64,000 nucleotides of DNA, from positions 1 to 64,000 of the IMG/VR virus record IMGVR_UViG_3300042147_000020; one strand, 5' to 3'. Below the pieces are notes generated by a model. It was not told the DNA's origin, did no database searches, and saw nothing but the letters and a program-made list of their open reading frames with translations. The position numbers and the translations under genes are program-made. This document shows positions 1,622 to 51,775 of this stretch, piece after piece (position 1 is the stretch's first letter; every line of letters starts with the position of its first letter).

Positions 1622-2668
1622 TTACTGCTCGCATATTTCTACATCCAACGAACGACGGTTAAGGATGGTGGCGAGTGGGGTGTAATCGGAATCGAAAGTT
1701 ACTTCAACCCCGATAGACTCGTTCTCAACCAGAGGTACCTGCACCAAGAGCGCTTGGTACACCTGTGGAACCTGAGTCCACTCAAGATCGCCACTCGATA
1801 AACCGAGCACACACTGCATCTCACGAGAGAACGAAACGCAGTAACCACACGGCTGCCACGCGATAGGCTTGAGGGTGATAACCCCGTCCACGAAGCGCAC
1901 ACCGTATTCATCTTCCACCATGAGGAATTCATGGAGACGCACTTCGATCGGATCACGGTACTCTTTGTCCGTCAGCACCACACCTCGGAACAGCCCCGGT
2001 TTGTACTCGCGATCTTTCAAGAACGTAGCGGTGGTGTAGTGGTGGTCCCAGAATTTATCGTACTGGAAGTTGAATGCCACCTGACCGATTTGTCCGTAGG
2101 CGGCGTCTTGCTTCAGTGAAGGCAGTTCCTCCAACGTACTGCTGATGCGAAAGTCACGGAATTGCATCGACGGCACACTGTACTCCAGACTCACCAAGCC
2201 TGTGTCATTGGCTTGACTGAGCGCTATCTGGCGCTTCAGACACAACAGCTTAACCATCCCACAGGTCACTGGTACCGTGATGTAAGCCATGTCATGGTAA
2301 CCCACGGAGTCATCGCCAGCTCGCCGTTTGTTCACGTAACGGACGTACTCCGTGAACGCATGGTTCTGTACCCAGAGGGGCTTCACACAACTGTGAGCGA
2401 TCGGTTCCAGCCTGATCAAGTCCCAGTAGTACGAACGTTGAGCATGAGGTTCGACCATACGTTTGATCTTGGCCATAGGGCCGTTTCCACCCAGGACAGC
2501 ACCGAGGAAACGAGTGCGTTGGTCACCGAAGAACATCGCGGCGTGAGAAGACAACATACCCACAGCCTGAGCTACTTGCGGGACAGCCATACACTGAGTA
2601 CTGGCTGACTGAATACCGCTAACCAGTTTGTTGACGCTTTCTTCAAGAGCAGGATCGAACGGATTCAT
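1622..2668 (-). CDS. Hypothetical protein
   Basis: Long ORF in the minus-strand operon; probable start MNPFD at 2668. Confidence 0.75.
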   Translation of the reverse strand: MNPFDPALEESVNKLVSGIQSASTQCMAVPQVAQAVGMLSSHAAMFFGDQRTRFLGAVLGGNGPMAKIKRMVEPHAQRSYYWDLIRLEPIAHSCVKPLWVQNHAFTEYVRYVNKRRAGDDSVGYHDMAYITVPVTCGMVKLLCLKRQIALSQANDTGLVSLEYSVPSMQFRDFRISSTLEELPSLKQDAAYGQIGQVAFNFQYDKFWDHHYTTATFLKDREYKPGLFRGVVLTDKEYRDPIEVRLHEFLMVEDEYGVRFVDGVITLKPIAWQPCGYCVSFSREMQCVLGLSSGDLEWTQVPQVYQALLVQVPLVENESIGVEVTFDSDYTPLATILNRRSLDVEICEQ

Positions 2669-2834
2669 GTAAGTACGCCCACCAATTACCAAAGGTTACG
2701 AAAGAGACCATGAAGGGGAGGCAGAGCCATCCCCAAATCGCTGGACCGAAGTGATCTACTGCTCTGATCAAACAGTAGAAGAAGCCAAGTCCACTGAGGA
2801 TCGCCAGCGTTGCGACGATCTGTAGCGCTAGCAT
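2643..2834 (-). CDS. Small membrane protein (2 TM)
   Basis: 63 aa with two hydrophobic segments; fills the gap between flanking genes. Confidence 0.6.
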   Translation of the reverse strand: MLALQIVATLAILSGLGFFYCLIRAVDHFGPAIWGWLCLPFMVSFVTFGNWWAYLHESVRSCS

Positions 2835-3553
2835 TCCACCACCGGTGAGTCACAGGTGTAGCAGTGTTCGCCGAGGTTCATGTTACCTTTCAAATCACCA
2901 GCAGCGCAGGAGGGTTCATCGAAAGGACTGAGCTTAGGGCCCTGATAATCCGCCGGATATACTGGACGCTCTTCACCACCCAGTACATCAGACATGAACT
3001 GAGTGGACTCAGCTACTGTGGACGTACCACGAGGACCGATGTCAGACATGATGTCTCGTTGTGGAGACTGCACCACAGTGATCAGGTCTTGTCGGTAACG
3101 CGTGTCGTAGTCAGGCTCACCCGGCAACACGTTCGCCATGTCAGGGTACATTACCTGAGCAACCTGCAAACCTTTACCAGCGCGTTGTTTCAGCTCAACG
3201 CAGTACTTGGTCACGGCTTCTTCCCCGTGGAGCAAACGAGTGTTACTGCGCATCACCTTGTCGGGTTCAGTCGATTTCACGATGTCAGTCCGCACTTCGT
3301 AAGACGCTACCTTCTCACGCAACCAAGCGTTAGCCTGGTTCTTGAGGATCGCACCCATGACGCTGTTGGGGATGGGTCCACAGATAAACAATTCTGGGAG
3401 TCCCTTGTGTGACAGGCCGACGGTGTACGAGTAGTTCACCGGGTTAGCACCAAACACGGGTGGTGGATTGACCGACAGGATAGCAAAGCCATTCGAGGCG
3501 ATCGAACGTTTGATGTGACGCTTGAGTTGTTTACGGTTGTCAGCAACTTTCAT
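2828..3553 (-). CDS. DUF4262-like protein
   Basis: Motifs YSYTVGLSHKGLPELFICG and QVMYPDxxxVLPGEPDY; GGAG RBS. Confidence 0.7.
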   Translation of the reverse strand: MKVADNRKQLKRHIKRSIASNGFAILSVNPPPVFGANPVNYSYTVGLSHKGLPELFICGPIPNSVMGAILKNQANAWLREKVASYEVRTDIVKSTEPDKVMRSNTRLLHGEEAVTKYCVELKQRAGKGLQVAQVMYPDMANVLPGEPDYDTRYRQDLITVVQSPQRDIMSDIGPRGTSTVAESTQFMSDVLGGEERPVYPADYQGPKLSPFDEPSCAAGDLKGNMNLGEHCYTCDSPVVEC

Positions 3554-3568
3554 TTTAAGCTCCTTAGC

Positions 3569-4030
3569 TTACAGGCGGTATTCGATTGGACCCGTGCCTT
3601 TTGGCAGAGGTTTGATGCGGGTACGGCGACGAGGCTTCTTCACGGCCTCAGGTACGTACATGAACAGGGCTGGCGCAGAGAAATCAGGTAGCCCTTTACG
3701 GACTTGAACCAGTATCGCCATCATCGGGACTTTGGGTGGATTAGACCAATCCATCTCGATGGTGTTTCCGTCACTCCAGCGGATGGTAGAGTCATGGTGC
3801 CGGGCGGCGAACTGAGTGATACCGATGTCTTTGATCTCGCGCTTGATGTCGGTAGCCTTGCCCTTGATCGTGACGTGGTAATAGTAGTTGTCCAGATCCG
3901 TCCCTGAGGCAATTTCAAAGTACGTCAGGTTTGGGTTGACCGGTGCAGTCAGGAGGAAACAACGAGTACCCCCGAATGCCGCAGAACGGTTAGTGGAGTA
4001 CTCTTTCAGTTGTCGAACGATCAAACTCAT
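3569..4030 (-). CDS. Hypothetical protein
   Basis: 153-aa ORF with ATGA overlap to the upstream gene. Confidence 0.75.
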   Translation of the reverse strand: MSLIVRQLKEYSTNRSAAFGGTRCFLLTAPVNPNLTYFEIASGTDLDNYYYHVTIKGKATDIKREIKDIGITQFAARHHDSTIRWSDGNTIEMDWSNPPKVPMMAILVQVRKGLPDFSAPALFMYVPEAVKKPRRRTRIKPLPKGTGPIEYRL

Positions 4031-4434
4031 ACAGCAACTTCCTTAGGTGCGTAGTGGTTGAGGATCACACGGCACTCTGCTTCGGTTGGTGGACGTGGGG
4101 GAGTGTTCTCGAACATCAACCAGATTGCTTCCGTACGACCACGGGATTTGTACCAACCCACCCACAGGCAAACGGGTTGGGAAACCATGTGTCCTTTTTC
4201 GTTCCTCGGAAGTACGTCGATGTCGAGCAGGCTGATCGTAGCGAAGTGTTGGTTCTCTTCGCACTGGTGATTGATACGACGGTTGTCCTCCATTTCAGCC
4301 AGATCACGGATCTCGTTGCAGGTAGCGCAGTTCCAGTTCTCACCGGAGAAAGGGCCCTTCAAGAAACCACACTTCGGGTCAGCCCCGTTCCACGTTTTAC
4401 CACGGGCTAGACAGGCTTGGCATTCAGTAGTCAT
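4027..4434 (-). CDS. Cys-rich hypothetical protein (possible Zn-binding)
   Basis: CxxC...C...CxxC pattern and WYKSRGRT motif; coupled to both neighbours. Confidence 0.7.
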   Translation of the reverse strand: MTTECQACLARGKTWNGADPKCGFLKGPFSGENWNCATCNEIRDLAEMEDNRRINHQCEENQHFATISLLDIDVLPRNEKGHMVSQPVCLWVGWYKSRGRTEAIWLMFENTPPRPPTEAECRVILNHYAPKEVAV

Positions 4435-5033
4435 TACGCAGCTCTCTTGAGTTCGTTCCCACGGTGGTCAAGGAATTTGGTTGCACGCTCCATACCCTCC
4501 TCCGTGTAGAGATTAATTCGATTCTTAACGCCACACTTGATGGCGAGTTGTAGTGCGGTGTTCGTACCACCTTTGACTTTCTCAGTCTTACCCACGGGTT
4601 TGCCCCAGTAGACAATCGAGCGAACAGGATCAGTAAGACACGCCCCCATGATCTGGAATACGTTTCGAGTGTGCATCGCAATGCCACCACGACCCATACC
4701 TTCCCAACTCCCGCGAGCTTCCAGCGCAATACTGTTAGCAGTTTCCCATGTTGCGAACTTGCTCGCATCGAAGAAGTAGTTCTTTGGATCATGGTAACGG
4801 TTACGTACGCCGTTCCAAGCCAAATAAATACGGGCACCCAACGTGTGGAAGTGAGGAGAGAGTAACGCCCCCTCGTAAAAGGCGGTGTCAGCTCCCTCAG
4901 CGTCGCCAGAGGAGAGTGCGAACCCTTGGGCATACAAAGCCACACTGATTCGCCGCATAAGCTCCAAGATCTCCTCAGGCGTTTCTCGACTACCTACCCC
5001 AGCGTACCAACCTTTGAATGGAATCGGCAACAT
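4434..5033 (-). CDS. SLOG-superfamily / DprA-like nucleotide-binding protein
   Basis: Motifs YAGVGSRETP, LSSGDAEGADTAF, HTRNVFQIMG, KGGTNTA. Confidence 0.8.
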   Translation of the reverse strand: MLPIPFKGWYAGVGSRETPEEILELMRRISVALYAQGFALSSGDAEGADTAFYEGALLSPHFHTLGARIYLAWNGVRNRYHDPKNYFFDASKFATWETANSIALEARGSWEGMGRGGIAMHTRNVFQIMGACLTDPVRSIVYWGKPVGKTEKVKGGTNTALQLAIKCGVKNRINLYTEEGMERATKFLDHRGNELKRAA

Positions 5034-5045
5034 AAGTCCGGTACC

Positions 5046-5378
5046 TCACCCATTGAAAGACAGGTACCACTCGTCGACCGACAGATCCGGCAAAGGACCT
5101 CGCACCTTAAAGGAAGTGACCTTCATTTGGTCGCCGTTCAAGTCGCGGGTGTAAACCATAGAACCAACCAGTTCAGTGGTACTACGATCCACACGACCAA
5201 AACCCACACCTACCCGAGTGTGATCAACCAAGTTGAAGTCTGGGTGGGTCTGGAGGTGGTTGACCAGTAACGCGAACGTATCAAAGCCAACACGTTCTAC
5301 GTTACTGGCTACTGGGACCTCTACCCCTTGCTGGTCTATATAGACGAGTTCAAAGGGGGCAAGTTGGCTAGGGAGCAT
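5046..5378 (-). CDS. Hypothetical protein
   Basis: 110-aa ORF with GAGG RBS. Confidence 0.6.
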   Translation of the reverse strand: MLPSQLAPFELVYIDQQGVEVPVASNVERVGFDTFALLVNHLQTHPDFNLVDHTRVGVGFGRVDRSTTELVGSMVYTRDLNGDQMKVTSFKVRGPLPDLSVDEWYLSFNG

Positions 5379-5770
5379 ATCGGTTCCTCGTCTCCGTCCA
5401 ACTCAAGTTGAACAAAGAGGTTGTTGTTGATGATTTGGAAATGGTTCATCGTGTAGACGTACCACTCTGCCTTCTTGAGAATTGGCGCTAGGTACGGATA
5501 CATAGCGTTATAGAGTAGCCAGATAAATTCGTAGAACTCTTGGGACTTCAAGTCCTCAAGGTAATTACAATCTTCTTCCTCATCTTCATTCTCGATCAAC
5601 ATATCCAAATACATGTGGAACAGGTGTCCAACAACCTCTCGTTCTTTGTATTCCTTGTCTTGAAGCATGAAACTGGCGACAAAGTCTACGCAGTAGTACA
5701 TGTGTTTCTCGACACGCCCAGACGCATTGCGATAAATGTGACCGAGTGGTATCAATAGGTTCTGTTCCAC
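5336..5770 (-). CDS. Acidic hypothetical protein
   Basis: 144 aa, GTG start with GGAGG RBS, acidic run ENEDEEED. Confidence 0.7.
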   Translation of the reverse strand: MEQNLLIPLGHIYRNASGRVEKHMYYCVDFVASFMLQDKEYKEREVVGHLFHMYLDMLIENEDEEEDCNYLEDLKSQEFYEFIWLLYNAMYPYLAPILKKAEWYVYTMNHFQIINNNLFVQLELDGDEEPICSLANLPPLNSSI

Positions 5771-5778
5771 GGTGCCTC

Positions 5779-6009
5779 CTAGAACGGATAGATCTTAAAC
5801 GTCCAGAGGGCGACCGCCAGCATCTGACCGAGGAAAAGAAAACACAGTCCTTGCCAGACCATCCATTTCTCGATACGACCTTCCCACGAGATCCGTAGCG
5901 CATGTGCCCAGTCCCGAGGACGCAGTCCCAACCAACGCACGCAGATATACAACAAAGCCAAAGCCCAGATGACCAGACCCAACACCAACCCAGCTATGAA
6001 TACATTCAT
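5779..6009 (-). CDS. Small membrane protein
   Basis: 76 aa, two TM segments, AGGAAG RBS. Confidence 0.7.
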   Translation of the reverse strand: MNVFIAGLVLGLVIWALALLYICVRWLGLRPRDWAHALRISWEGRIEKWMVWQGLCFLFLGQMLAVALWTFKIYPF

Positions 6010-6034
6010 AATCTTGCTTCCTTAAGCCAGAGGG

Positions 6035-6062
6035 TATAAAAGGCTCTCCCGAAGGAGAGCCT
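6035..6062 (-). terminator. Rho-independent terminator
   Basis: AGGCTCTCC-CGAA-GGAGAGCCT with TTTTATAC on the minus strand. Confidence 0.75.
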
Positions 6063-6067
6063 CAGTT

Positions 6068-6532
6068 TCAACCGTACACGCCTTGCACGGCCAACCACGT
6101 GGTCAGCACAGCACTAATCACAACGATCGCAAAGGAGATCTTCTGATCAGCCGCACGATGTACGTTGCCTTTTGTCCGGGTGAGTTTCCAGACGTTGTTC
6201 CACTTCTTGACATCCGTCCCCACTTCACTCATCGCCCACAATACGCGGTAGACCGTGAAGGTAAAGAAGAACATCCCAACACCCCAGAACACTGCCGCAC
6301 GAGCCACACCACCAGACCCGACACCCCAGTTAGCCAGACTGCCCACAACACTCAGCGTGATGACGAACGCCACCATGTACCAGAGTGGAGTGTCTTTGGA
6401 TACTACGACGAACACCATCGTTGGGATGTAGCTTTTGAAGTTGAACTTGTGGGTCATGAACATCGCTACGAACAACAACGCCACCGAGATCCCAATGCCC
6501 ACCACCAAACCTGTTAAGATTGCATTAAACAT
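6068..6532 (-). CDS. Multi-pass membrane protein
   Basis: 154 aa, 4-5 hydrophobic segments. Confidence 0.75.
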   Translation of the reverse strand: MFNAILTGLVVGIGISVALLFVAMFMTHKFNFKSYIPTMVFVVVSKDTPLWYMVAFVITLSVVGSLANWGVGSGGVARAAVFWGVGMFFFTFTVYRVLWAMSEVGTDVKKWNNVWKLTRTKGNVHRAADQKISFAIVVISAVLTTWLAVQGVYG

Positions 6533-32421: not shown

Positions 32422-32468
32422 TCTAGTCTATTCACTGAAGTAATATATACTTGAGATTTTTTTGATTC
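32422..32468 (-). promoter_or_regulatory. phiKZ-type early (virion RNAP) promoter
   Basis: AAAAAAATCTCAAGTATATATTACTTCAGTGAATAGACTAGA; TATATTAC core; near-identical copy at 51.1 kb. Confidence 0.75.
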
Positions 32469-50716: not shown

Positions 50717-51058
50717 TTAAGCGAATTGCAGGGGTTGTTTAGCCACGACTGCGTTGTTGCGTTCCAACGACTCGGTGTTAGCCGGAGCGGTAGGGGTGTT
50801 GTAGCGAGACAGTTCAGCTTCGTCGAAGTTGATAGCCACTTCTTCAATAGCTTCAAAGCCAACCAACACTTCAGCAGTGGTGGTAACAAAGGTAGCGATG
50901 TAGATGCGGTGGAAGTCACCATTCAGATCTTTAACAGCTACAACTTCACGACCTTCGTGTTGACCTACAGTAACAGTCTTGGCGATGAAGAAGCTTTGAT
51001 CGTCTTTAACTTTCACCAGGCCTTTGCAGGAATTCAGGACTACGATTACTTTGTTCAT
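50717..51058 (-). CDS. Hypothetical early protein
   Basis: 113 aa, GGAG RBS, first gene after the early promoter. Confidence 0.75.
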   Translation of the reverse strand: MNKVIVVLNSCKGLVKVKDDQSFFIAKTVTVGQHEGREVVAVKDLNGDFHRIYIATFVTTTAEVLVGFEAIEEVAINFDEAELSRYNTPTAPANTESLERNNAVVAKQPLQFA

Positions 51059-51099
51059 GTTGTGTTCTCCATAGAACGAAAGATTAATGACCAGATTAT

Positions 51100-51143
51100 T
51101 CTAGTCTATTCACCAGAGTAATATAGATCTGAGATTTTTTTAA
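51100..51143 (-). promoter_or_regulatory. phiKZ-type early promoter
   Basis: AAAAAAATCTCAGATCTATATTACTCTGGTGAATAGACTAGA. Confidence 0.75.
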
Positions 51144-51161
51144 TTGGAATGTTTACACTAT

Positions 51162-51308
51162 GTTGTGAATACAGGCAATGTCAACATTGTCCGCAAGGGG
51201 GTGATCCAGCCTTAGTGTGTTCTCCGAATCCTTGGATCGCTGGGAAGCAGTTCTAAAAGGGATTCACGGCTGCCTGTGTTCGGACCGTCCTTCGGGGCGG
51301 TCCTTTAT
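51162..51308 (+). ncRNA. Candidate structured ncRNA with its own terminator
   Basis: TATG at 51159; closing stem GAATACAGGCA/TGCCTGTGTTC; inner stem GTGATCCA/TGGATCGC; terminator GGACCGTCC-TTCG-GGGCGGTCC-TTT; G-U pairs favour the + strand. Confidence 0.55.
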
Positions 51309-51353
51309 GCCCAAAAAAAAGAGGGGGCGCAAGCTCCCTCTTTTTGTTACTAC

Positions 51354-51713
51354 TTACGAGTGGCCACCATGTTTCTTCAAAGCCGCCGTCACCAAGGCGT
51401 TCTGACGAGTGGTGTCTTCGGTCATGAGCTTAAGTAGGGACGGACTGGCTTTAACCAACGGGCTCATCTCCATCTCAAACCGACCGCCCTTACGGATATG
51501 TAACACCCCGAGCTGATAGCCGAATTCACTACTGGTGAACTCAATGAAGTCCCCTTCGTTACAGTAGGTGATGGCTAACTGCAACATCCGTGGCATCGCA
51601 GTATCGAAGTAACTGTAATGTCGCGCCATGATGACTTCTTTGGATTTACCACGCATCATGATAGCAACAACCCGACGCGGGGCAGGATCTTTCTTTTGTT
51701 TCAAGCTGGCCAT
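51354..51713 (-). CDS. Hypothetical protein
   Basis: 119 aa, AAGGA RBS, followed by a terminator. Confidence 0.75.
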   Translation of the reverse strand: MASLKQKKDPAPRRVVAIMMRGKSKEVIMARHYSYFDTAMPRMLQLAITYCNEGDFIEFTSSEFGYQLGVLHIRKGGRFEMEMSPLVKASPSLLKLMTEDTTRQNALVTAALKKHGGHS

Positions 51714-51775
51714 TCTACTTTCCTTCTAAGGACTTAAGTTTAGTGGGGTTCCTGAGGGAACCCCCTTTATGTCGC

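What the first reader, a model, noticed from the sequence alone, without database searches (positions are those of the whole stretch)
51159..51310. Stand-alone ~145-nt structured RNA with possible pseudoknot or kissing loops
Seen: a non-coding gap, divergent from an early promoter, starts at TATG (51159). It has an 11-bp closing helix GAATACAGGCA(51167)/TGCCTGTGTTC(51281), a CC-GCAA-GG tetraloop and helix GTGATCCA/TGGATCGC. The loop of that helix holds GAATCC (51226-31), complementary to GGATTC (51260-65), which itself lies in a possible GCAGTT/GGCTGC loop. A UUCG terminator follows, separate from the terminator of the convergent gene. G-U pairs point to the + strand. Established: TATG is the phiKZ late-promoter core. 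Inference: an independent phage ncRNA of unknown class (decoy for a defence protein, antitoxin-like pseudoknot, or structural RNA).
Basis: partly seen in the sequence, partly recalled or inferred. Interest (0 to 1): 0.75.

Follow-up and report, generated by a model that had tools for sequence, protein, structure and literature searches.

The report
Jumbo-phage RNA complementary to 16S tail
The gap encodes a real, independently transcribed structured RNA of a previously undescribed family shared with phiKZ and other giant Pseudomonas phages, whose one invariant, unpaired stretch is the exact complement of the ribosome's mRNA-docking 16S rRNA tail, so it probably targets the host ribosome.

Summary
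The element is real.

**What it is**
- Window 51162-51309 (+) is a roughly 148-nt non-coding RNA gene.
- It has a conserved TATG late-type promoter core and its own hairpin-UUUAUG terminator.

**Family membership**
- A covariance model built only from other phages (phiKZ, 201phi2-1, PhiPA3 and metagenomic jumbo phages) hits 51166-51281 (+) at 41 bits, E = 7e-8.
- This is the only hit in the window and in the genome.

**Structure**
- The shared fold is a three-way junction: P1, a short P2 hairpin, and P3 with an inner GNRA hairpin.
- Covariation is strong: 92% of cells are paired against 71% in shuffles, and 22 of 23 pairs change on both sides.

**Key feature**
- The only invariant block, AGGGGGUGAUCCAG (51196-51209), lies in the unpaired junction.
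- Extended to 17 nt (51195-51211), it complements the Pseudomonas 16S rRNA 3' end, including the anti-Shine-Dalgarno sequence.

**Expression**
- In public phiKZ cDNA data the homologue is a discrete RNA on the predicted strand, in places over 100-fold deeper than its flanks.

**Mechanism**
- The most likely mechanism is an antisense or Shine-Dalgarno-mimic RNA that binds host 30S or 16S rRNA. This is inferred, not shown.

I found no description of this family in Rfam or in the papers I could search.

The parts
51106..51148 (-). Early-promoter region of the divergent gene 50717-51058, not part of the RNA. It contains TATATTAC on the minus strand at 51125-51118.
   Evidence: The motif recurs at four other places in the genome at 83-93% identity. 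TATATTAC was read. My recall is that it matches the phiKZ early-promoter core.
51159..51162 (+). TATG, a late-type (nvRNAP) promoter core. The predicted +1 is G51162.
   Evidence: Invariant in all 7 subfamily-A copies. TATG directly abuts P1 in 16 of 16 C/D-type copies. In phiKZ, TATG is necessary for nvRNAP transcription and its G is +1 (PMC4666361). The start site in the window itself was not measured.
51167..51177 (+). P1, 5' strand (GAATACAGGCA).
   Evidence: Pairs with 51271-51281. Across the family all 8 modelled P1 pairs change on both sides, and 91.5% of cells are paired.
51176..51189 (+). P2, a short hairpin (CAAUG-UCAA-CAUUG; the minimal form is AUG/CAU).
   Evidence: A hairpin sits at the same place in all subfamilies with different sequences, for example CAGU-UUCG-ACUG, GUACU-UUCG-AGUAC and GCGC-AUA-GCGC. 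Helices 2 and 3 are 97-100% paired.
51195..51211 (+). Junction J2/3 with AAGGGGGUGAUCCAGCC. This is 17 nt complementary, with one G.U pair, to the 16S rRNA 3' end (E. coli numbering, from memory: 1525-1541), including the anti-Shine-Dalgarno sequence. The invariant core AGGGGGUGAUCCAG is 51196-51209.
   Evidence: Fourteen invariant columns in 28 distinct sequences, unpaired in the consensus structure. It is the longest complement to the verified Pseudomonas 16S tail anywhere in the 238.8-kb genome on either strand. The duplex energy is -34 kcal/mol.
51226..51265 (+). P3 domain. The outer helix is GAAUCC 51226-31 with GGAUUC 51260-65. The inner hairpin P3a is GCU-GGGA-AGC at 51239-51248, and its stem extends to 51234-51253.
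   Evidence: The P3 sequence differs wholesale between subfamilies but stays complementary: 98.6% of cells are paired, and all 5 pairs change on both sides, four of them with three or more pair types. The loop is GNGA, and N takes all four bases within subfamily A.
51266..51281 (+). J3/1 (ACGGC, 51266-70) and the P1 3' strand (TGCCTGTGTTC, 51271-81).
   Evidence: ACGG(C/U)GCC is conserved family-wide. This stretch also resembles the antisense of 16S about 30-45 nt from its 3' end, and lies collinear with the first block (p about 0.016 for the window).
51282..51309 (+). Intrinsic terminator of the RNA: GGACCGUCC-UUCG-GGGCGGUCC followed by UUUAUG.
   Evidence: The stem carries compensatory changes in relatives. 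Hairpin plus TTTATG is the genome-wide terminator motif: 38 of 43 hairpin-TTTAT sites continue with G. In phiKZ a discrete contig of the homologue ends just after the same motif.
51313..51345 (-). Separate terminator of the convergent gene 51354-51713: a hairpin at 51320-51341 flanked by an A run and a T run. Not part of the RNA.
   Evidence: Read. It is not conserved with the RNA in relatives where the neighbouring gene differs.

Best explanation
Window 51162-51309 (+) is a single-copy gene for a roughly 148-nt structured non-coding RNA.

**Transcription.** It is predicted to start at the G of a conserved TATG late-type promoter core, read by the phage's own non-virion RNA polymerase. It ends at its own hairpin-UUUAUG terminator.

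**Family and fold.** It belongs to a family found in giant Pseudomonas phages: phiKZ, 201phi2-1, PhiPA3, the PA1C/HPP-Temi group, pPa_SNUABM_DT01 and many uncultured ones. All members fold into a three-way junction. P1 closes the molecule, P2 is a short hairpin, and P3 carries an inner GNRA-capped hairpin.

**The functional part.** The junction strand between P2 and P3 holds the only invariant sequence, AGGGGGUGAUCCAG. In the window it reads AAGGGGGUGAUCCAGCC. This is the Watson-Crick (one G.U) complement of the last 17 or so nucleotides of the host 16S rRNA but one, which is the single-stranded tail that carries the anti-Shine-Dalgarno sequence.

**Proposed mechanism (inferred).**
- The scaffold presents this strand as a 'super Shine-Dalgarno' without a usable start codon or ORF.
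- The RNA docks on the 16S tail of host 30S subunits, or of 16S precursors, far more tightly than any mRNA.
- It thereby occupies or remodels the mRNA-docking site late in infection.
- A second, weaker block of antisense similarity lies in J3/1 and the P1 3' strand. It matches the 16S region just upstream of helix 45. This suggests the RNA descends from, or acts as, an antisense copy of the 16S 3' minor domain. The exposed block could act as a toehold and P1 could open afterwards.

**Shown versus inferred.**
- Shown: the gene, the family, the fold, the invariance, the complementarity, and expression and strand in phiKZ.
- Inferred: binding to the ribosome and its consequence.
For: **Membership**
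- Model R3 contains no sequence of the window's subfamily. It hits 51166-51281 (+) at 41.2 bits, E = 6.9e-8, and this is the only hit in the window and in the genome.

**Fold**
- 92.3% of cells are paired against 71.4 +/- 1.1 in shuffles (0 of 500 shuffles reach it).
- 22 of 23 pairs change on both sides.
- Slid controls give 25-49% pairing (one search is similar).

**Invariant block**
- There are 14 invariant columns in 28 distinct sequences, unpaired in the consensus.
- The invariance is not an ascertainment effect. A scan anchored only on TATG+P1 and J3/1+P1' found 16 loci, and all 16 carry the block. Members found by BLAST or synteny carry it too.

**16S tail**
- A Pseudomonas putida SSU rRNA (Rfam RF00177, full length) ends in GGCTGGATCACCTCCTTA.
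- The window block is the longest complement to this tail in 238.8 kb on both strands.
- The duplex energy is -34 kcal/mol, against -9 to -16 for ordinary Shine-Dalgarno sequences.

**No conserved ORF**
- A 1-nt indel and non-synonymous, helix-compensating changes follow the block.
- Other subfamilies have no start codon at the matching place.

**Expression of the phiKZ homologue**
- In an ONT cDNA run the word depth is 2100-6500 over the element, against 0-140 in the flanks.
- Strand-switch adapter sequence sits at the 5' end, at the A of TATAG.
- A poly(A)-tailing signature and an Illumina 3' adapter mark a 3' end 150 nt downstream.
- A separate run holds a discrete 210-nt contig ending after UUUAUGCC.
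- The adapter orientation shows that the RNA is the strand carrying the block.

**Second antisense block**
- p = 0.003-0.03 in four of the five phiKZ-like members tested and in two of the three subfamily-A members tested, the window among them.

**Precedent**
- The rreB small mRNA has a 17-nt Shine-Dalgarno sequence, binds 30S strongly and is poorly translated (PMC5711450).
Against: - No experiment here shows binding to 16S rRNA or to ribosomes.
- The block keeps G where a perfect complement would have A (GGGGG, not GGAGG) in all 28 sequences. This hints at another constraint, such as a protein contact or tertiary contact, avoidance of GGAG-specific cleavage, or avoidance of true initiation.
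- About 4-5 nt of the complement fall in the base of helix 45 (positions from memory). The second block falls in regions that are structured in mature 30S subunits.
- The phage's own genes use Shine-Dalgarno sequences: 40% of crude ORFs have a 4-mer core against 13% background. A global competitor would therefore also hit phage translation.
- The RNA is dispensable for some relatives. R3 finds no copy in 17 related genomes (12 of them at least 90% complete) or in PaBG.
- Thermodynamic folding leaves the block only about 50% unpaired on average.
- Expression and ends were measured for the phiKZ homologue, not for the window's own RNA.
- All known hosts are Pseudomonas, so co-variation with host 16S could not be tested.
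Confidence: 0.6

Rival explanations
1. **Protein-binding or scaffold RNA.** The invariant block would be recognised by a phage or host protein, for example a ribosomal protein, RNase, chaperone or defence sensor, or would make a tertiary contact. Its complementarity to 16S would be a relic of origin from captured antisense rDNA, or a coincidence. The RNA would act as a decoy, sponge or cofactor without pairing to rRNA.
For: - G is invariant at the position where A would pair better.
- The three-way junction with GNRA loop is typical of RNAs that dock onto proteins or other RNAs.
- The second antisense block is compatible with descent from rDNA.
- The RNA is accessory in its clade, as counter-defence genes often are.
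Against: - A 14-nt block invariant across lineages whose helices have diverged completely is longer than typical protein sites.
- It coincides nucleotide for nucleotide with the one naturally single-stranded, functionally exposed segment of 16S.
- No conserved neighbouring protein gene travels with the RNA.
Confidence: 0.2
2. **Antisense inhibitor of 30S biogenesis.** This uses the same pairing but a different target state. The RNA would pair with the unfolded 3' minor domain of nascent 16S or 17S rRNA (tail, helix 45 and the linker to helix 44). It would block 3'-end maturation or folding, or direct cleavage of the duplex, so that no new host ribosomes are made.
For: - Complementarity extends beyond the free tail into the base of helix 45.
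- Duplex prediction with the last 29 nt of 16S gives -36 to -49 kcal/mol, with extra pairs after the block in most members.
- The collinear second block matches the region just upstream of helix 45.
Against: - The extra complementarity is weak and not significant in subfamilies C and D.
- Only the part matching the free tail is invariant.
- Blocking ribosome synthesis late in a lytic cycle has no obvious benefit.
Confidence: 0.12
3. **Small mRNA or cis-acting leader with an extended Shine-Dalgarno sequence (rreB-like).** The block would be a real ribosome-binding site for a tiny ORF, such as GUG 51215 with 13 codons. Alternatively the element would be a 5' leader or attenuator controlling a downstream gene.
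For: - A GUG lies 13 nt after the G run and opens a 13-codon frame.
- In several genomes a same-strand gene follows the terminator.
- rreB combines a 17-nt Shine-Dalgarno sequence, a GUG start and a 14-aa ORF.
Against: - The frame is not conserved. A 1-nt indel changes its length from 13 to more than 35 codons within the closest relatives.
- Substitutions follow helices, not codons.
- phiKZ-like, C and D members have no start codon at the matching place.
- In the window and in PA1C the next gene is on the opposite strand.
- In phiKZ most transcripts end at the terminator or before it.
Confidence: 0.05
4. **The first reader's model.** A pseudoknotted or kissing-loop RNA acting as a decoy for a defence protein or as an antitoxin-like pseudoknot.
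For: - GAATCC and GGATTC are complementary, and the RNA is stable on the + strand.
Against: - The helix that would make this pairing a loop-loop contact is broken by uncompensated changes in three lineages.
- The pairing is a nested helix that covaries across the family.
- There is a single copy, with no repeat array and no conserved partner gene.
Confidence: 0.03

Closest known systems
The unannotated intergenic RNA of phiKZ between gp203 and gp204 (NC_004629 about 212850-213040), and its counterparts in 201phi2-1 (229005-229200), PhiPA3 (216214-216389), PA1C/HPP-Temi and pPa_SNUABM_DT01
   Same: - Same family by covariance model.
- Same three-way junction, same invariant block in the same junction, a GNRA hairpin inside P3, and a hairpin-UUUAUG terminator.
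- Single copy per genome.
   Different: - The window RNA lacks the extra 3' hairpin that phiKZ-like members carry between P1 and the terminator.
- It has TATG rather than TATAG upstream.
- It sits in a hypervariable block of unknown genes, not near the SNF2 helicase gene.
- Helix sequences are entirely different.
- These RNAs are unannotated in GenBank, apart from small hypothetical ORFs called over the locus in Viktualia, HPP-Temi and pPa_SNUABM_DT01. They may be listed without function among ncRNA candidates in supplementary tables I could not read (Putzeys 2024 Table S7; 201phi2-1 paper Table S4).
rreB/rreR small mRNAs of alpha-proteobacteria with a 16-17-nt Shine-Dalgarno sequence (PMC5711450), and Rfam RF01867 (Caulobacter sRNA CC2171), whose consensus carries AAGGAGGUGAUCCAG
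   Same: - A short transcript of about 150 nt with 16-17 nt of complementarity to the 16S 3' end.
- rreB binds 30S strongly and is barely translated, which is the behaviour proposed here.
   Different: - Those are cellular mRNAs with a conserved 14-18-aa ORF. This is a phage RNA with no conserved ORF, a different fold, and GGGGG instead of GGAGG.
- The CC2171 model scores only 19.5 bits against a gathering score of 75.
Other phage-encoded small RNA candidates of phiKZ-like phages: 3'UTR_PHIKZ298, 5'UTR_p40, the short RNAs upstream of PHIKZ221 and PHIKZ302, and sRNA005/sRNAgp182
   Same: - Short, abundant, structured transcripts of giant Pseudomonas phages that end at intrinsic terminators and have unknown function.
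   Different: - They lie at different loci.
- None is reported to carry rRNA complementarity.
- Only sRNA005/sRNAgp182 is reported as conserved across genera, and only by location and a predicted fold. Most are UTR-derived.
Synthetic oligonucleotides complementary to the 16S 3' end, used as inhibitors of initiation (classical work, recalled from memory)
   Same: - The principle is the same: occupying the anti-Shine-Dalgarno tail blocks Shine-Dalgarno-dependent initiation.
   Different: - Those are artificial, unstructured and short. This is a natural, structured, phage-encoded RNA.

Membership tests
Jumbo-phage 16S-tail-complementary RNA family (defined here; type member is the phiKZ gp203/gp204 intergenic RNA) | Significant score with a covariance model built without the candidate's own subfamily | tested here: met
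   R3 was built from 18 phiKZ-like, C and D sequences. It hits 51166-51281 (+) at 41.2 bits, E = 6.9e-8, the only hit in the window and in the genome.
Jumbo-phage 16S-tail-complementary RNA family | Three-way junction P1/P2/P3 with a GNRA-capped hairpin inside P3 | tested here: met
   The window aligns to all helices. Family covariation is 92.3% paired, with 22 of 23 pairs changed on both sides. The window's loop is GGGA (51242-45).
Jumbo-phage 16S-tail-complementary RNA family | Invariant AGGGGGUGAUCCAG in the P2-P3 junction | tested here: met
   Present at 51196-51209 and invariant in 28 distinct sequences.
Jumbo-phage 16S-tail-complementary RNA family | Own promoter core (TATG or TATAG) abutting P1, and a hairpin-UUUAUG terminator | tested here: met
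   TATG at 51159-62 and the hairpin with TTTATG at 51282-51309. This is sequence evidence only.
Jumbo-phage 16S-tail-complementary RNA family | Accumulates as a discrete RNA of the strand that carries the block | not testable with these tools
   Shown for the phiKZ member. For the window, RNA-type runs hold 7-21% of its 31-mers, but the single read-laying run had already been used.
Extended-Shine-Dalgarno small mRNAs (rreB/rreR; Rfam CC2171) | At least 16 nt complementary to the 16S 3' end | tested here: met
   Seventeen nt with one G.U pair against a verified Pseudomonas 16S end.
Extended-Shine-Dalgarno small mRNAs (rreB/rreR; Rfam CC2171) | Conserved small ORF with a start codon downstream of the Shine-Dalgarno sequence | tested here: not met
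   The frame length changes through a 1-nt indel among the closest relatives, and other subfamilies have no start codon there.
Extended-Shine-Dalgarno small mRNAs (rreB/rreR; Rfam CC2171) | Match to the Rfam model at gathering score | tested here: not met
   RF01867 scores 19.5 bits against a gathering score of 75. Nothing in the whole window reaches gathering score.
   Three lineages each break a pair without compensation. The first arm is invariant and unpaired family-wide.
phiKZ-type late (nvRNAP) promoter | TATG with transcription starting at its G | tested here: inconclusive
   The motif is present and conserved. The rule comes from PMC4666361, which also shows that TATG alone is not sufficient. 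The window's start site was not measured. In phiKZ the 5' end maps to TATAG within the 2-nt resolution of the method.

The most novel reading that the evidence does not exclude
Giant nucleus-forming-type Pseudomonas phages encode an abundant late RNA that is an evolved antisense copy of the host 16S rRNA 3' end. It base-pairs with the anti-Shine-Dalgarno tail of host small ribosomal subunits. This would be a phage RNA that directly reprograms or shuts off the ribosome's mRNA-docking site. It would be the first natural trans-acting RNA known to target rRNA for host takeover, and it would be directly testable in phiKZ.
Probability: 0.45. Interest if true: 0.93.

Novelty: categorically new. Interest (0 to 1): 0.87.

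Why it matters
Phages are known to take over translation with proteins. Published examples include the phiKZ ribosome-binding protein gp014 and, as far as I recall, phage-encoded S21 and T4 RegB. No phage RNA is known to address the ribosome's anti-Shine-Dalgarno tail.

- **A conserved, unexplained feature in a model phage.** The RNA is highly expressed and conserved across several genera of therapeutic-candidate jumbo phages. Its one invariant feature is the complement of that tail. This points to an unrecognised layer of host takeover, or of control over the timing of translation.
- **It is easy to test.** The family includes phiKZ, PhiPA3 and 201phi2-1, for which antisense knock-down, Cas13 selection, Grad-seq and cryo-EM are all established.
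- **Immediate practical value.** Even if the ribosome hypothesis fails, this is a new structured RNA family with strong covariation that is missing from Rfam and from phage annotations. It is currently mis-annotated as small hypothetical ORFs in some genomes, for example Viktualia, HPP-Temi and DT01.

Tried and rejected
- **Rfam.** Nothing in the window reaches gathering score. At E up to 10 there are only sub-threshold matches, driven by the terminators and the Shine-Dalgarno-like block.
- **BLAST of the window element against 50,697 phage records.** It found only the promoter repeat and terminator-like pieces. The family link came from a 14-mer scan that happened to hit 201phi2-1 and PhiPA3.
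- **MAFFT across subfamilies.** It misaligned P1. RNAalifold on that alignment gave a poor structure.
- **First two covariance models.**
  - R1, built from two near-identical sequences, scored the window at only 8.2 bits.
  - R2, built from six phiKZ-like sequences, gave 17.5 bits, E = 0.11.
  - Only R3 was decisive.
- **Copies in relatives.** I searched 17 related genomes and PaBG and found none. The syntenic position there holds unrelated genes.
- **Coding potential.** It was considered and rejected.
- **Flanking proteins.** No Pfam or PHROG match.
- **Complex prediction of the RNA with the 16S tail.** The tool requires a protein chain.
- **Supplementary tables that might list the phiKZ and 201phi2-1 transcripts.** They are not held. 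Ceyssens 2014 is not held either.
- **Co-variation of the block with host 16S.** It could not be tested, because every member with a known host infects Pseudomonas. Scans that left the base after CCA free found only CCAG in jumbo contigs.
- **The 13-nt perfect anti-Shine-Dalgarno complement at genome position 147345.** It is not followed by a gene start.
Full report
**1. The observation**

The region 51059-51353 is a non-coding gap between two minus-strand ORFs: 50717-51058 (113 aa) and 51354-51713 (119 aa). Neither ORF, nor three other nearby ORFs, matches Pfam or PHROGs.

- TATG at 51159-62.
- The closing helix 51167-77 with 51271-81.
- GAATCC at 51226-31 and GGATTC at 51260-65.
- A UUCG-loop hairpin at 51282-51303 followed by TTTATG.
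- A second terminator at 51313-45 for the convergent gene.
- On the minus strand, the TATATTAC early-promoter core. It lies inside a 43-bp motif with four more copies in the genome.

The + strand folds much better than the minus strand: -59.5 kcal/mol at z = -3.3 against -41 kcal/mol at z = -1.7.

The window is the first 64 kb of a 238.8-kb IMG/VR viral contig, distantly related to Pseudomonas jumbo phage PaBG.

**2. Close relatives**

The 119-aa neighbour has homologues in 23 viral contigs. Six of them carry the element at 88-95% nucleotide identity.

- Conservation starts sharply at TATG and stops after the terminator, while the flanks are unalignable.
- The terminator stem shows compensatory changes.
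- The loop of the inner hairpin reads GNGA, with N taking all four bases.
At least one of those changes, the G-to-T, is compensated within the stem below the GNGA loop.
- A 1-nt indel destroys any common reading frame.

So the RNA is real and non-coding, but the pseudoknot reading is wrong.

The other 17 related genomes, 12 of them at least 90% complete, have no copy anywhere. They carry unrelated genes at the syntenic place. The element is therefore accessory within this clade.

**3. A large family that includes phiKZ**

The never-changing stretch reads AAGGGGGTGATCCAGCC. A scan of viral contigs for part of it hit look-alike elements in 201phi2-1 and PhiPA3. BLAST and synteny then gave Viktualia, PA1C, HPP-Temi and phiKZ itself, where it lies between gp203 and gp204. 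It is unannotated there, or overlaid by tiny hypothetical ORFs.

Gapped pattern scans added two more subfamilies from contigs of about 160-277 kb and shorter fragments, and the isolate pPa_SNUABM_DT01.

I built covariance models stepwise. The last one, R3, contains no sequence of the window's subfamily. It still finds 51166-51281 (+) at 41.2 bits, E = 6.9e-8, as the only hit in the window and in the whole genome. It also finds exactly one copy each in phiKZ, 201phi2-1, PhiPA3 and DT01, and none in PaBG.

**4. The fold**

I aligned 30 members (28 distinct) to the model. The structure is a three-way junction:
- P1 closes the molecule.
- P2 is a short hairpin.
- P3 has an inner GNRA hairpin.

Pair counts are as follows (one search is similar):

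| Measure | Observed | Control |
|---|---|---|
| Cells forming standard pairs | 92.3% | 71.4 +/- 1.1% in 500 shuffles (none reaches it) |
| Pairs with changes on both sides | 22 of 23 | about 12 in shuffles |
| Pairing with the 3' partner slid by 1-3 columns | n/a | 25-49% |

P3 is the clearest case. It reads GAAUCC/GGAUUC in the window. Elsewhere it reads GAAACG/CGUUUC, GGAGUG/CACUCC, GAUAC/GUAUC, GGUAC/GUACC or GGGG/CCCC.

One caveat applies: an alignment fitted to a model leans towards that model's structure. The wholesale sequence replacement in P2 and P3 does not depend on this.

**5. The invariant block and the 16S tail**

The only run of invariant columns is AGGGGGTGATCCAG, and it is unpaired in the consensus. 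The invariance does not come from the way members were collected. A scan anchored only on TATG+P1 and J3/1+P1' returned 16 loci, and all 16 carry the block.

I verified the target sequence with tools. The pattern ending in GGCTGGATCACCTCCTTA occurs in many Pseudomonas genomes. In P. putida it is exactly the 3' end of a full-length Rfam SSU rRNA match.

- The window's 51195-51211 pairs with 17 consecutive nucleotides of this tail, with one G.U pair.
- It is the longest such complement in the 238.8-kb genome on either strand.
- The predicted duplex is -34 kcal/mol, against -9 to -16 for ordinary Shine-Dalgarno sequences.

A second, weaker similarity follows in the same order. J3/1 plus the P1 3' strand resembles the antisense of the 16S segment just upstream of helix 45. 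The p-values are 0.003-0.03 in four of the five phiKZ-like members tested and in two of the three subfamily-A members tested, the window among them. The similarity is not significant in subfamilies C and D. This fits an origin from, or an action as, antisense RNA of the 16S 3' minor domain.

**6. Expression**

For the window itself only a search for runs was possible. DNA runs from rhizosphere, plant and wastewater samples hold it. Several RNA-type runs hold 7-21% of its words, about the share of the RNA within the 501-nt query.

- In an ONT cDNA run the word depth over the element is 2100-6500. The flanks show 0-140.
- Strand-switch adapter sequence abuts the 5' end, at the A of TATAG just before P1.
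- A poly-T loose end in that run and an Illumina 3' adapter in a second run mark a 3' end 150 nt downstream.
- A third run contains a discrete 210-nt contig ending right after UUUAUGCC.
- The adapter orientation shows that the RNA is the strand carrying the block.

**7. Promoter and terminator**

TATG is the phiKZ late-promoter core and its G is +1. [quoted passage not shown]
- TATG abuts P1 in all C and D members, so the predicted RNA starts at the first P1 base.
- TATG lies 5 nt upstream of P1 in the window's subfamily.
- phiKZ-like members have TATAG at the same place.

Hairpin plus TTTATG is the general terminator motif of this genome: 38 of 43 hairpin-TTTAT sites continue with G.

**8. 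Mechanism**

*Shown:* a single-copy RNA gene, a conserved scaffold, and one invariant unpaired strand complementary to the ribosome's mRNA-docking tail. Very high expression is shown for the phiKZ homologue, and no member has a conserved ORF.

*Inferred:* the scaffold presents a 'super Shine-Dalgarno' that binds the anti-Shine-Dalgarno tail of host 30S subunits, or of 16S precursors. It would occupy or remodel that site late in infection. The precedent is rreB, a 165-nt cellular mRNA whose 17-nt Shine-Dalgarno sequence makes it bind 30S strongly and be poorly translated.

*Open points:*
- All members keep GGGGG rather than GGAGG.
- Part of the complement lies in the base of helix 45.
- The phage's own genes use Shine-Dalgarno sequences.
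- Some relatives lack the RNA.

They are weighed in their own sections.

**9. What is known**

- No Rfam family matches at gathering score.
- The phiKZ dRNA-seq, Grad-seq and ONT papers, the 201phi2-1 ONT paper, the phiKZ ribosome paper, a 2025 review of nucleus-forming phages and a phage transposon screen do not describe an RNA at this locus. They report no rRNA complementarity either. Full-text searches found nothing closer.
- The transcript may be listed without comment among the 17 phiKZ and 11 201phi2-1 ncRNA candidates in supplementary tables that are not held.

**10. Verdict**

It is a member of a new, widely conserved and strongly covarying family of jumbo-phage RNAs. The functional part of the family is almost certainly the 16S-tail complement.

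- Confidence in the gene, the family and the fold is about 0.95.
- Confidence in the ribosome-pairing mechanism is about 0.55.

Noticed in passing
Window 51745-51770 (+); genome-wide in G000: Hairpin followed by TTTATG is a genome-wide motif: 38 of 43 perfect hairpin+TTTAT sites continue with G. The terminator tail therefore contains the late-promoter core TATG. Ten of the 38 sites, including 51745-51770, point against the local gene direction. That suggests antisense or small + strand transcripts, or bidirectional use.
   Followed up: partly
Window 51106-51148; G000 32422-32467, 96820-96855, 105603-105642, 149028-149070: A 43-bp AT-rich motif containing TATATTAC on the opposite strand recurs five times at 83-93% identity. 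Weaker matches occur in phiKZ-like phages. These look like phiKZ-type early promoters in a PaBG-like phage.
   Followed up: partly
L195:2220-2400 (+), phiKZ/PA7 genome, 5' part of the gp203 helicase gene: In the ONT cDNA run there is a discrete 181-nt piece at depth 138, with strand-switch adapter at 2220 and a poly(A) signature at 2400. It is a short transcript divergent from the RNA described here. It could be a second small RNA or a prematurely terminated gp203 mRNA.
   Followed up: no
Window 51266-51281 and the equivalent in phiKZ-like members (for example L155:7955-7972): J3/1 plus the P1 3' strand resembles the antisense of 16S just upstream of helix 45, which as I recall is the region of the universal '1492R' primer. 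It lies collinear with the tail complement. This hints that the RNA arose from captured antisense rDNA.
   Followed up: partly
L008-L029, downstream of the P0002 homologue (locus positions about 3300-3750): The region next to the conserved 119-aa gene is hypervariable among 24 related genomes, with different unrelated genes in almost every lineage. The RNA is one of the cassettes found there. In four contigs it sits about 560 bp further from that gene than in the window, and in at least three of them a same-strand gene follows it.
   Followed up: partly
G000 147345-147357 (+): A perfect 13-nt complement of the 16S tail (AGGAGGTGATCCA) is not followed by a plausible gene start. Only a 7-codon frame follows it.
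   Followed up: partly
Window 51185-51344 (+): The best sub-threshold Rfam match is Caulobacter sRNA CC2171 at 19.5 bits. Its consensus contains AAGGAGGUGAUCCAG, so a cellular sRNA family shares the extended anti-Shine-Dalgarno complement.
   Followed up: partly
Runs X8, X10, X11, X16, X19-X24: RNA-type public runs hold 7-21% of the 31-mers of window 51000-51500. They come from wastewater, a mixed culture, a food fermentation and whole-organism samples. This is about the share expected if only the RNA, or a relative's RNA, is present.
   Followed up: no
L152:1517-1606, L154:1414-1696, L407:2531-2653: GenBank records of Viktualia, HPP-Temi and pPa_SNUABM_DT01 annotate 30-48-aa 'hypothetical proteins' on top of the RNA. 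These are probably mis-annotations.
   Followed up: no
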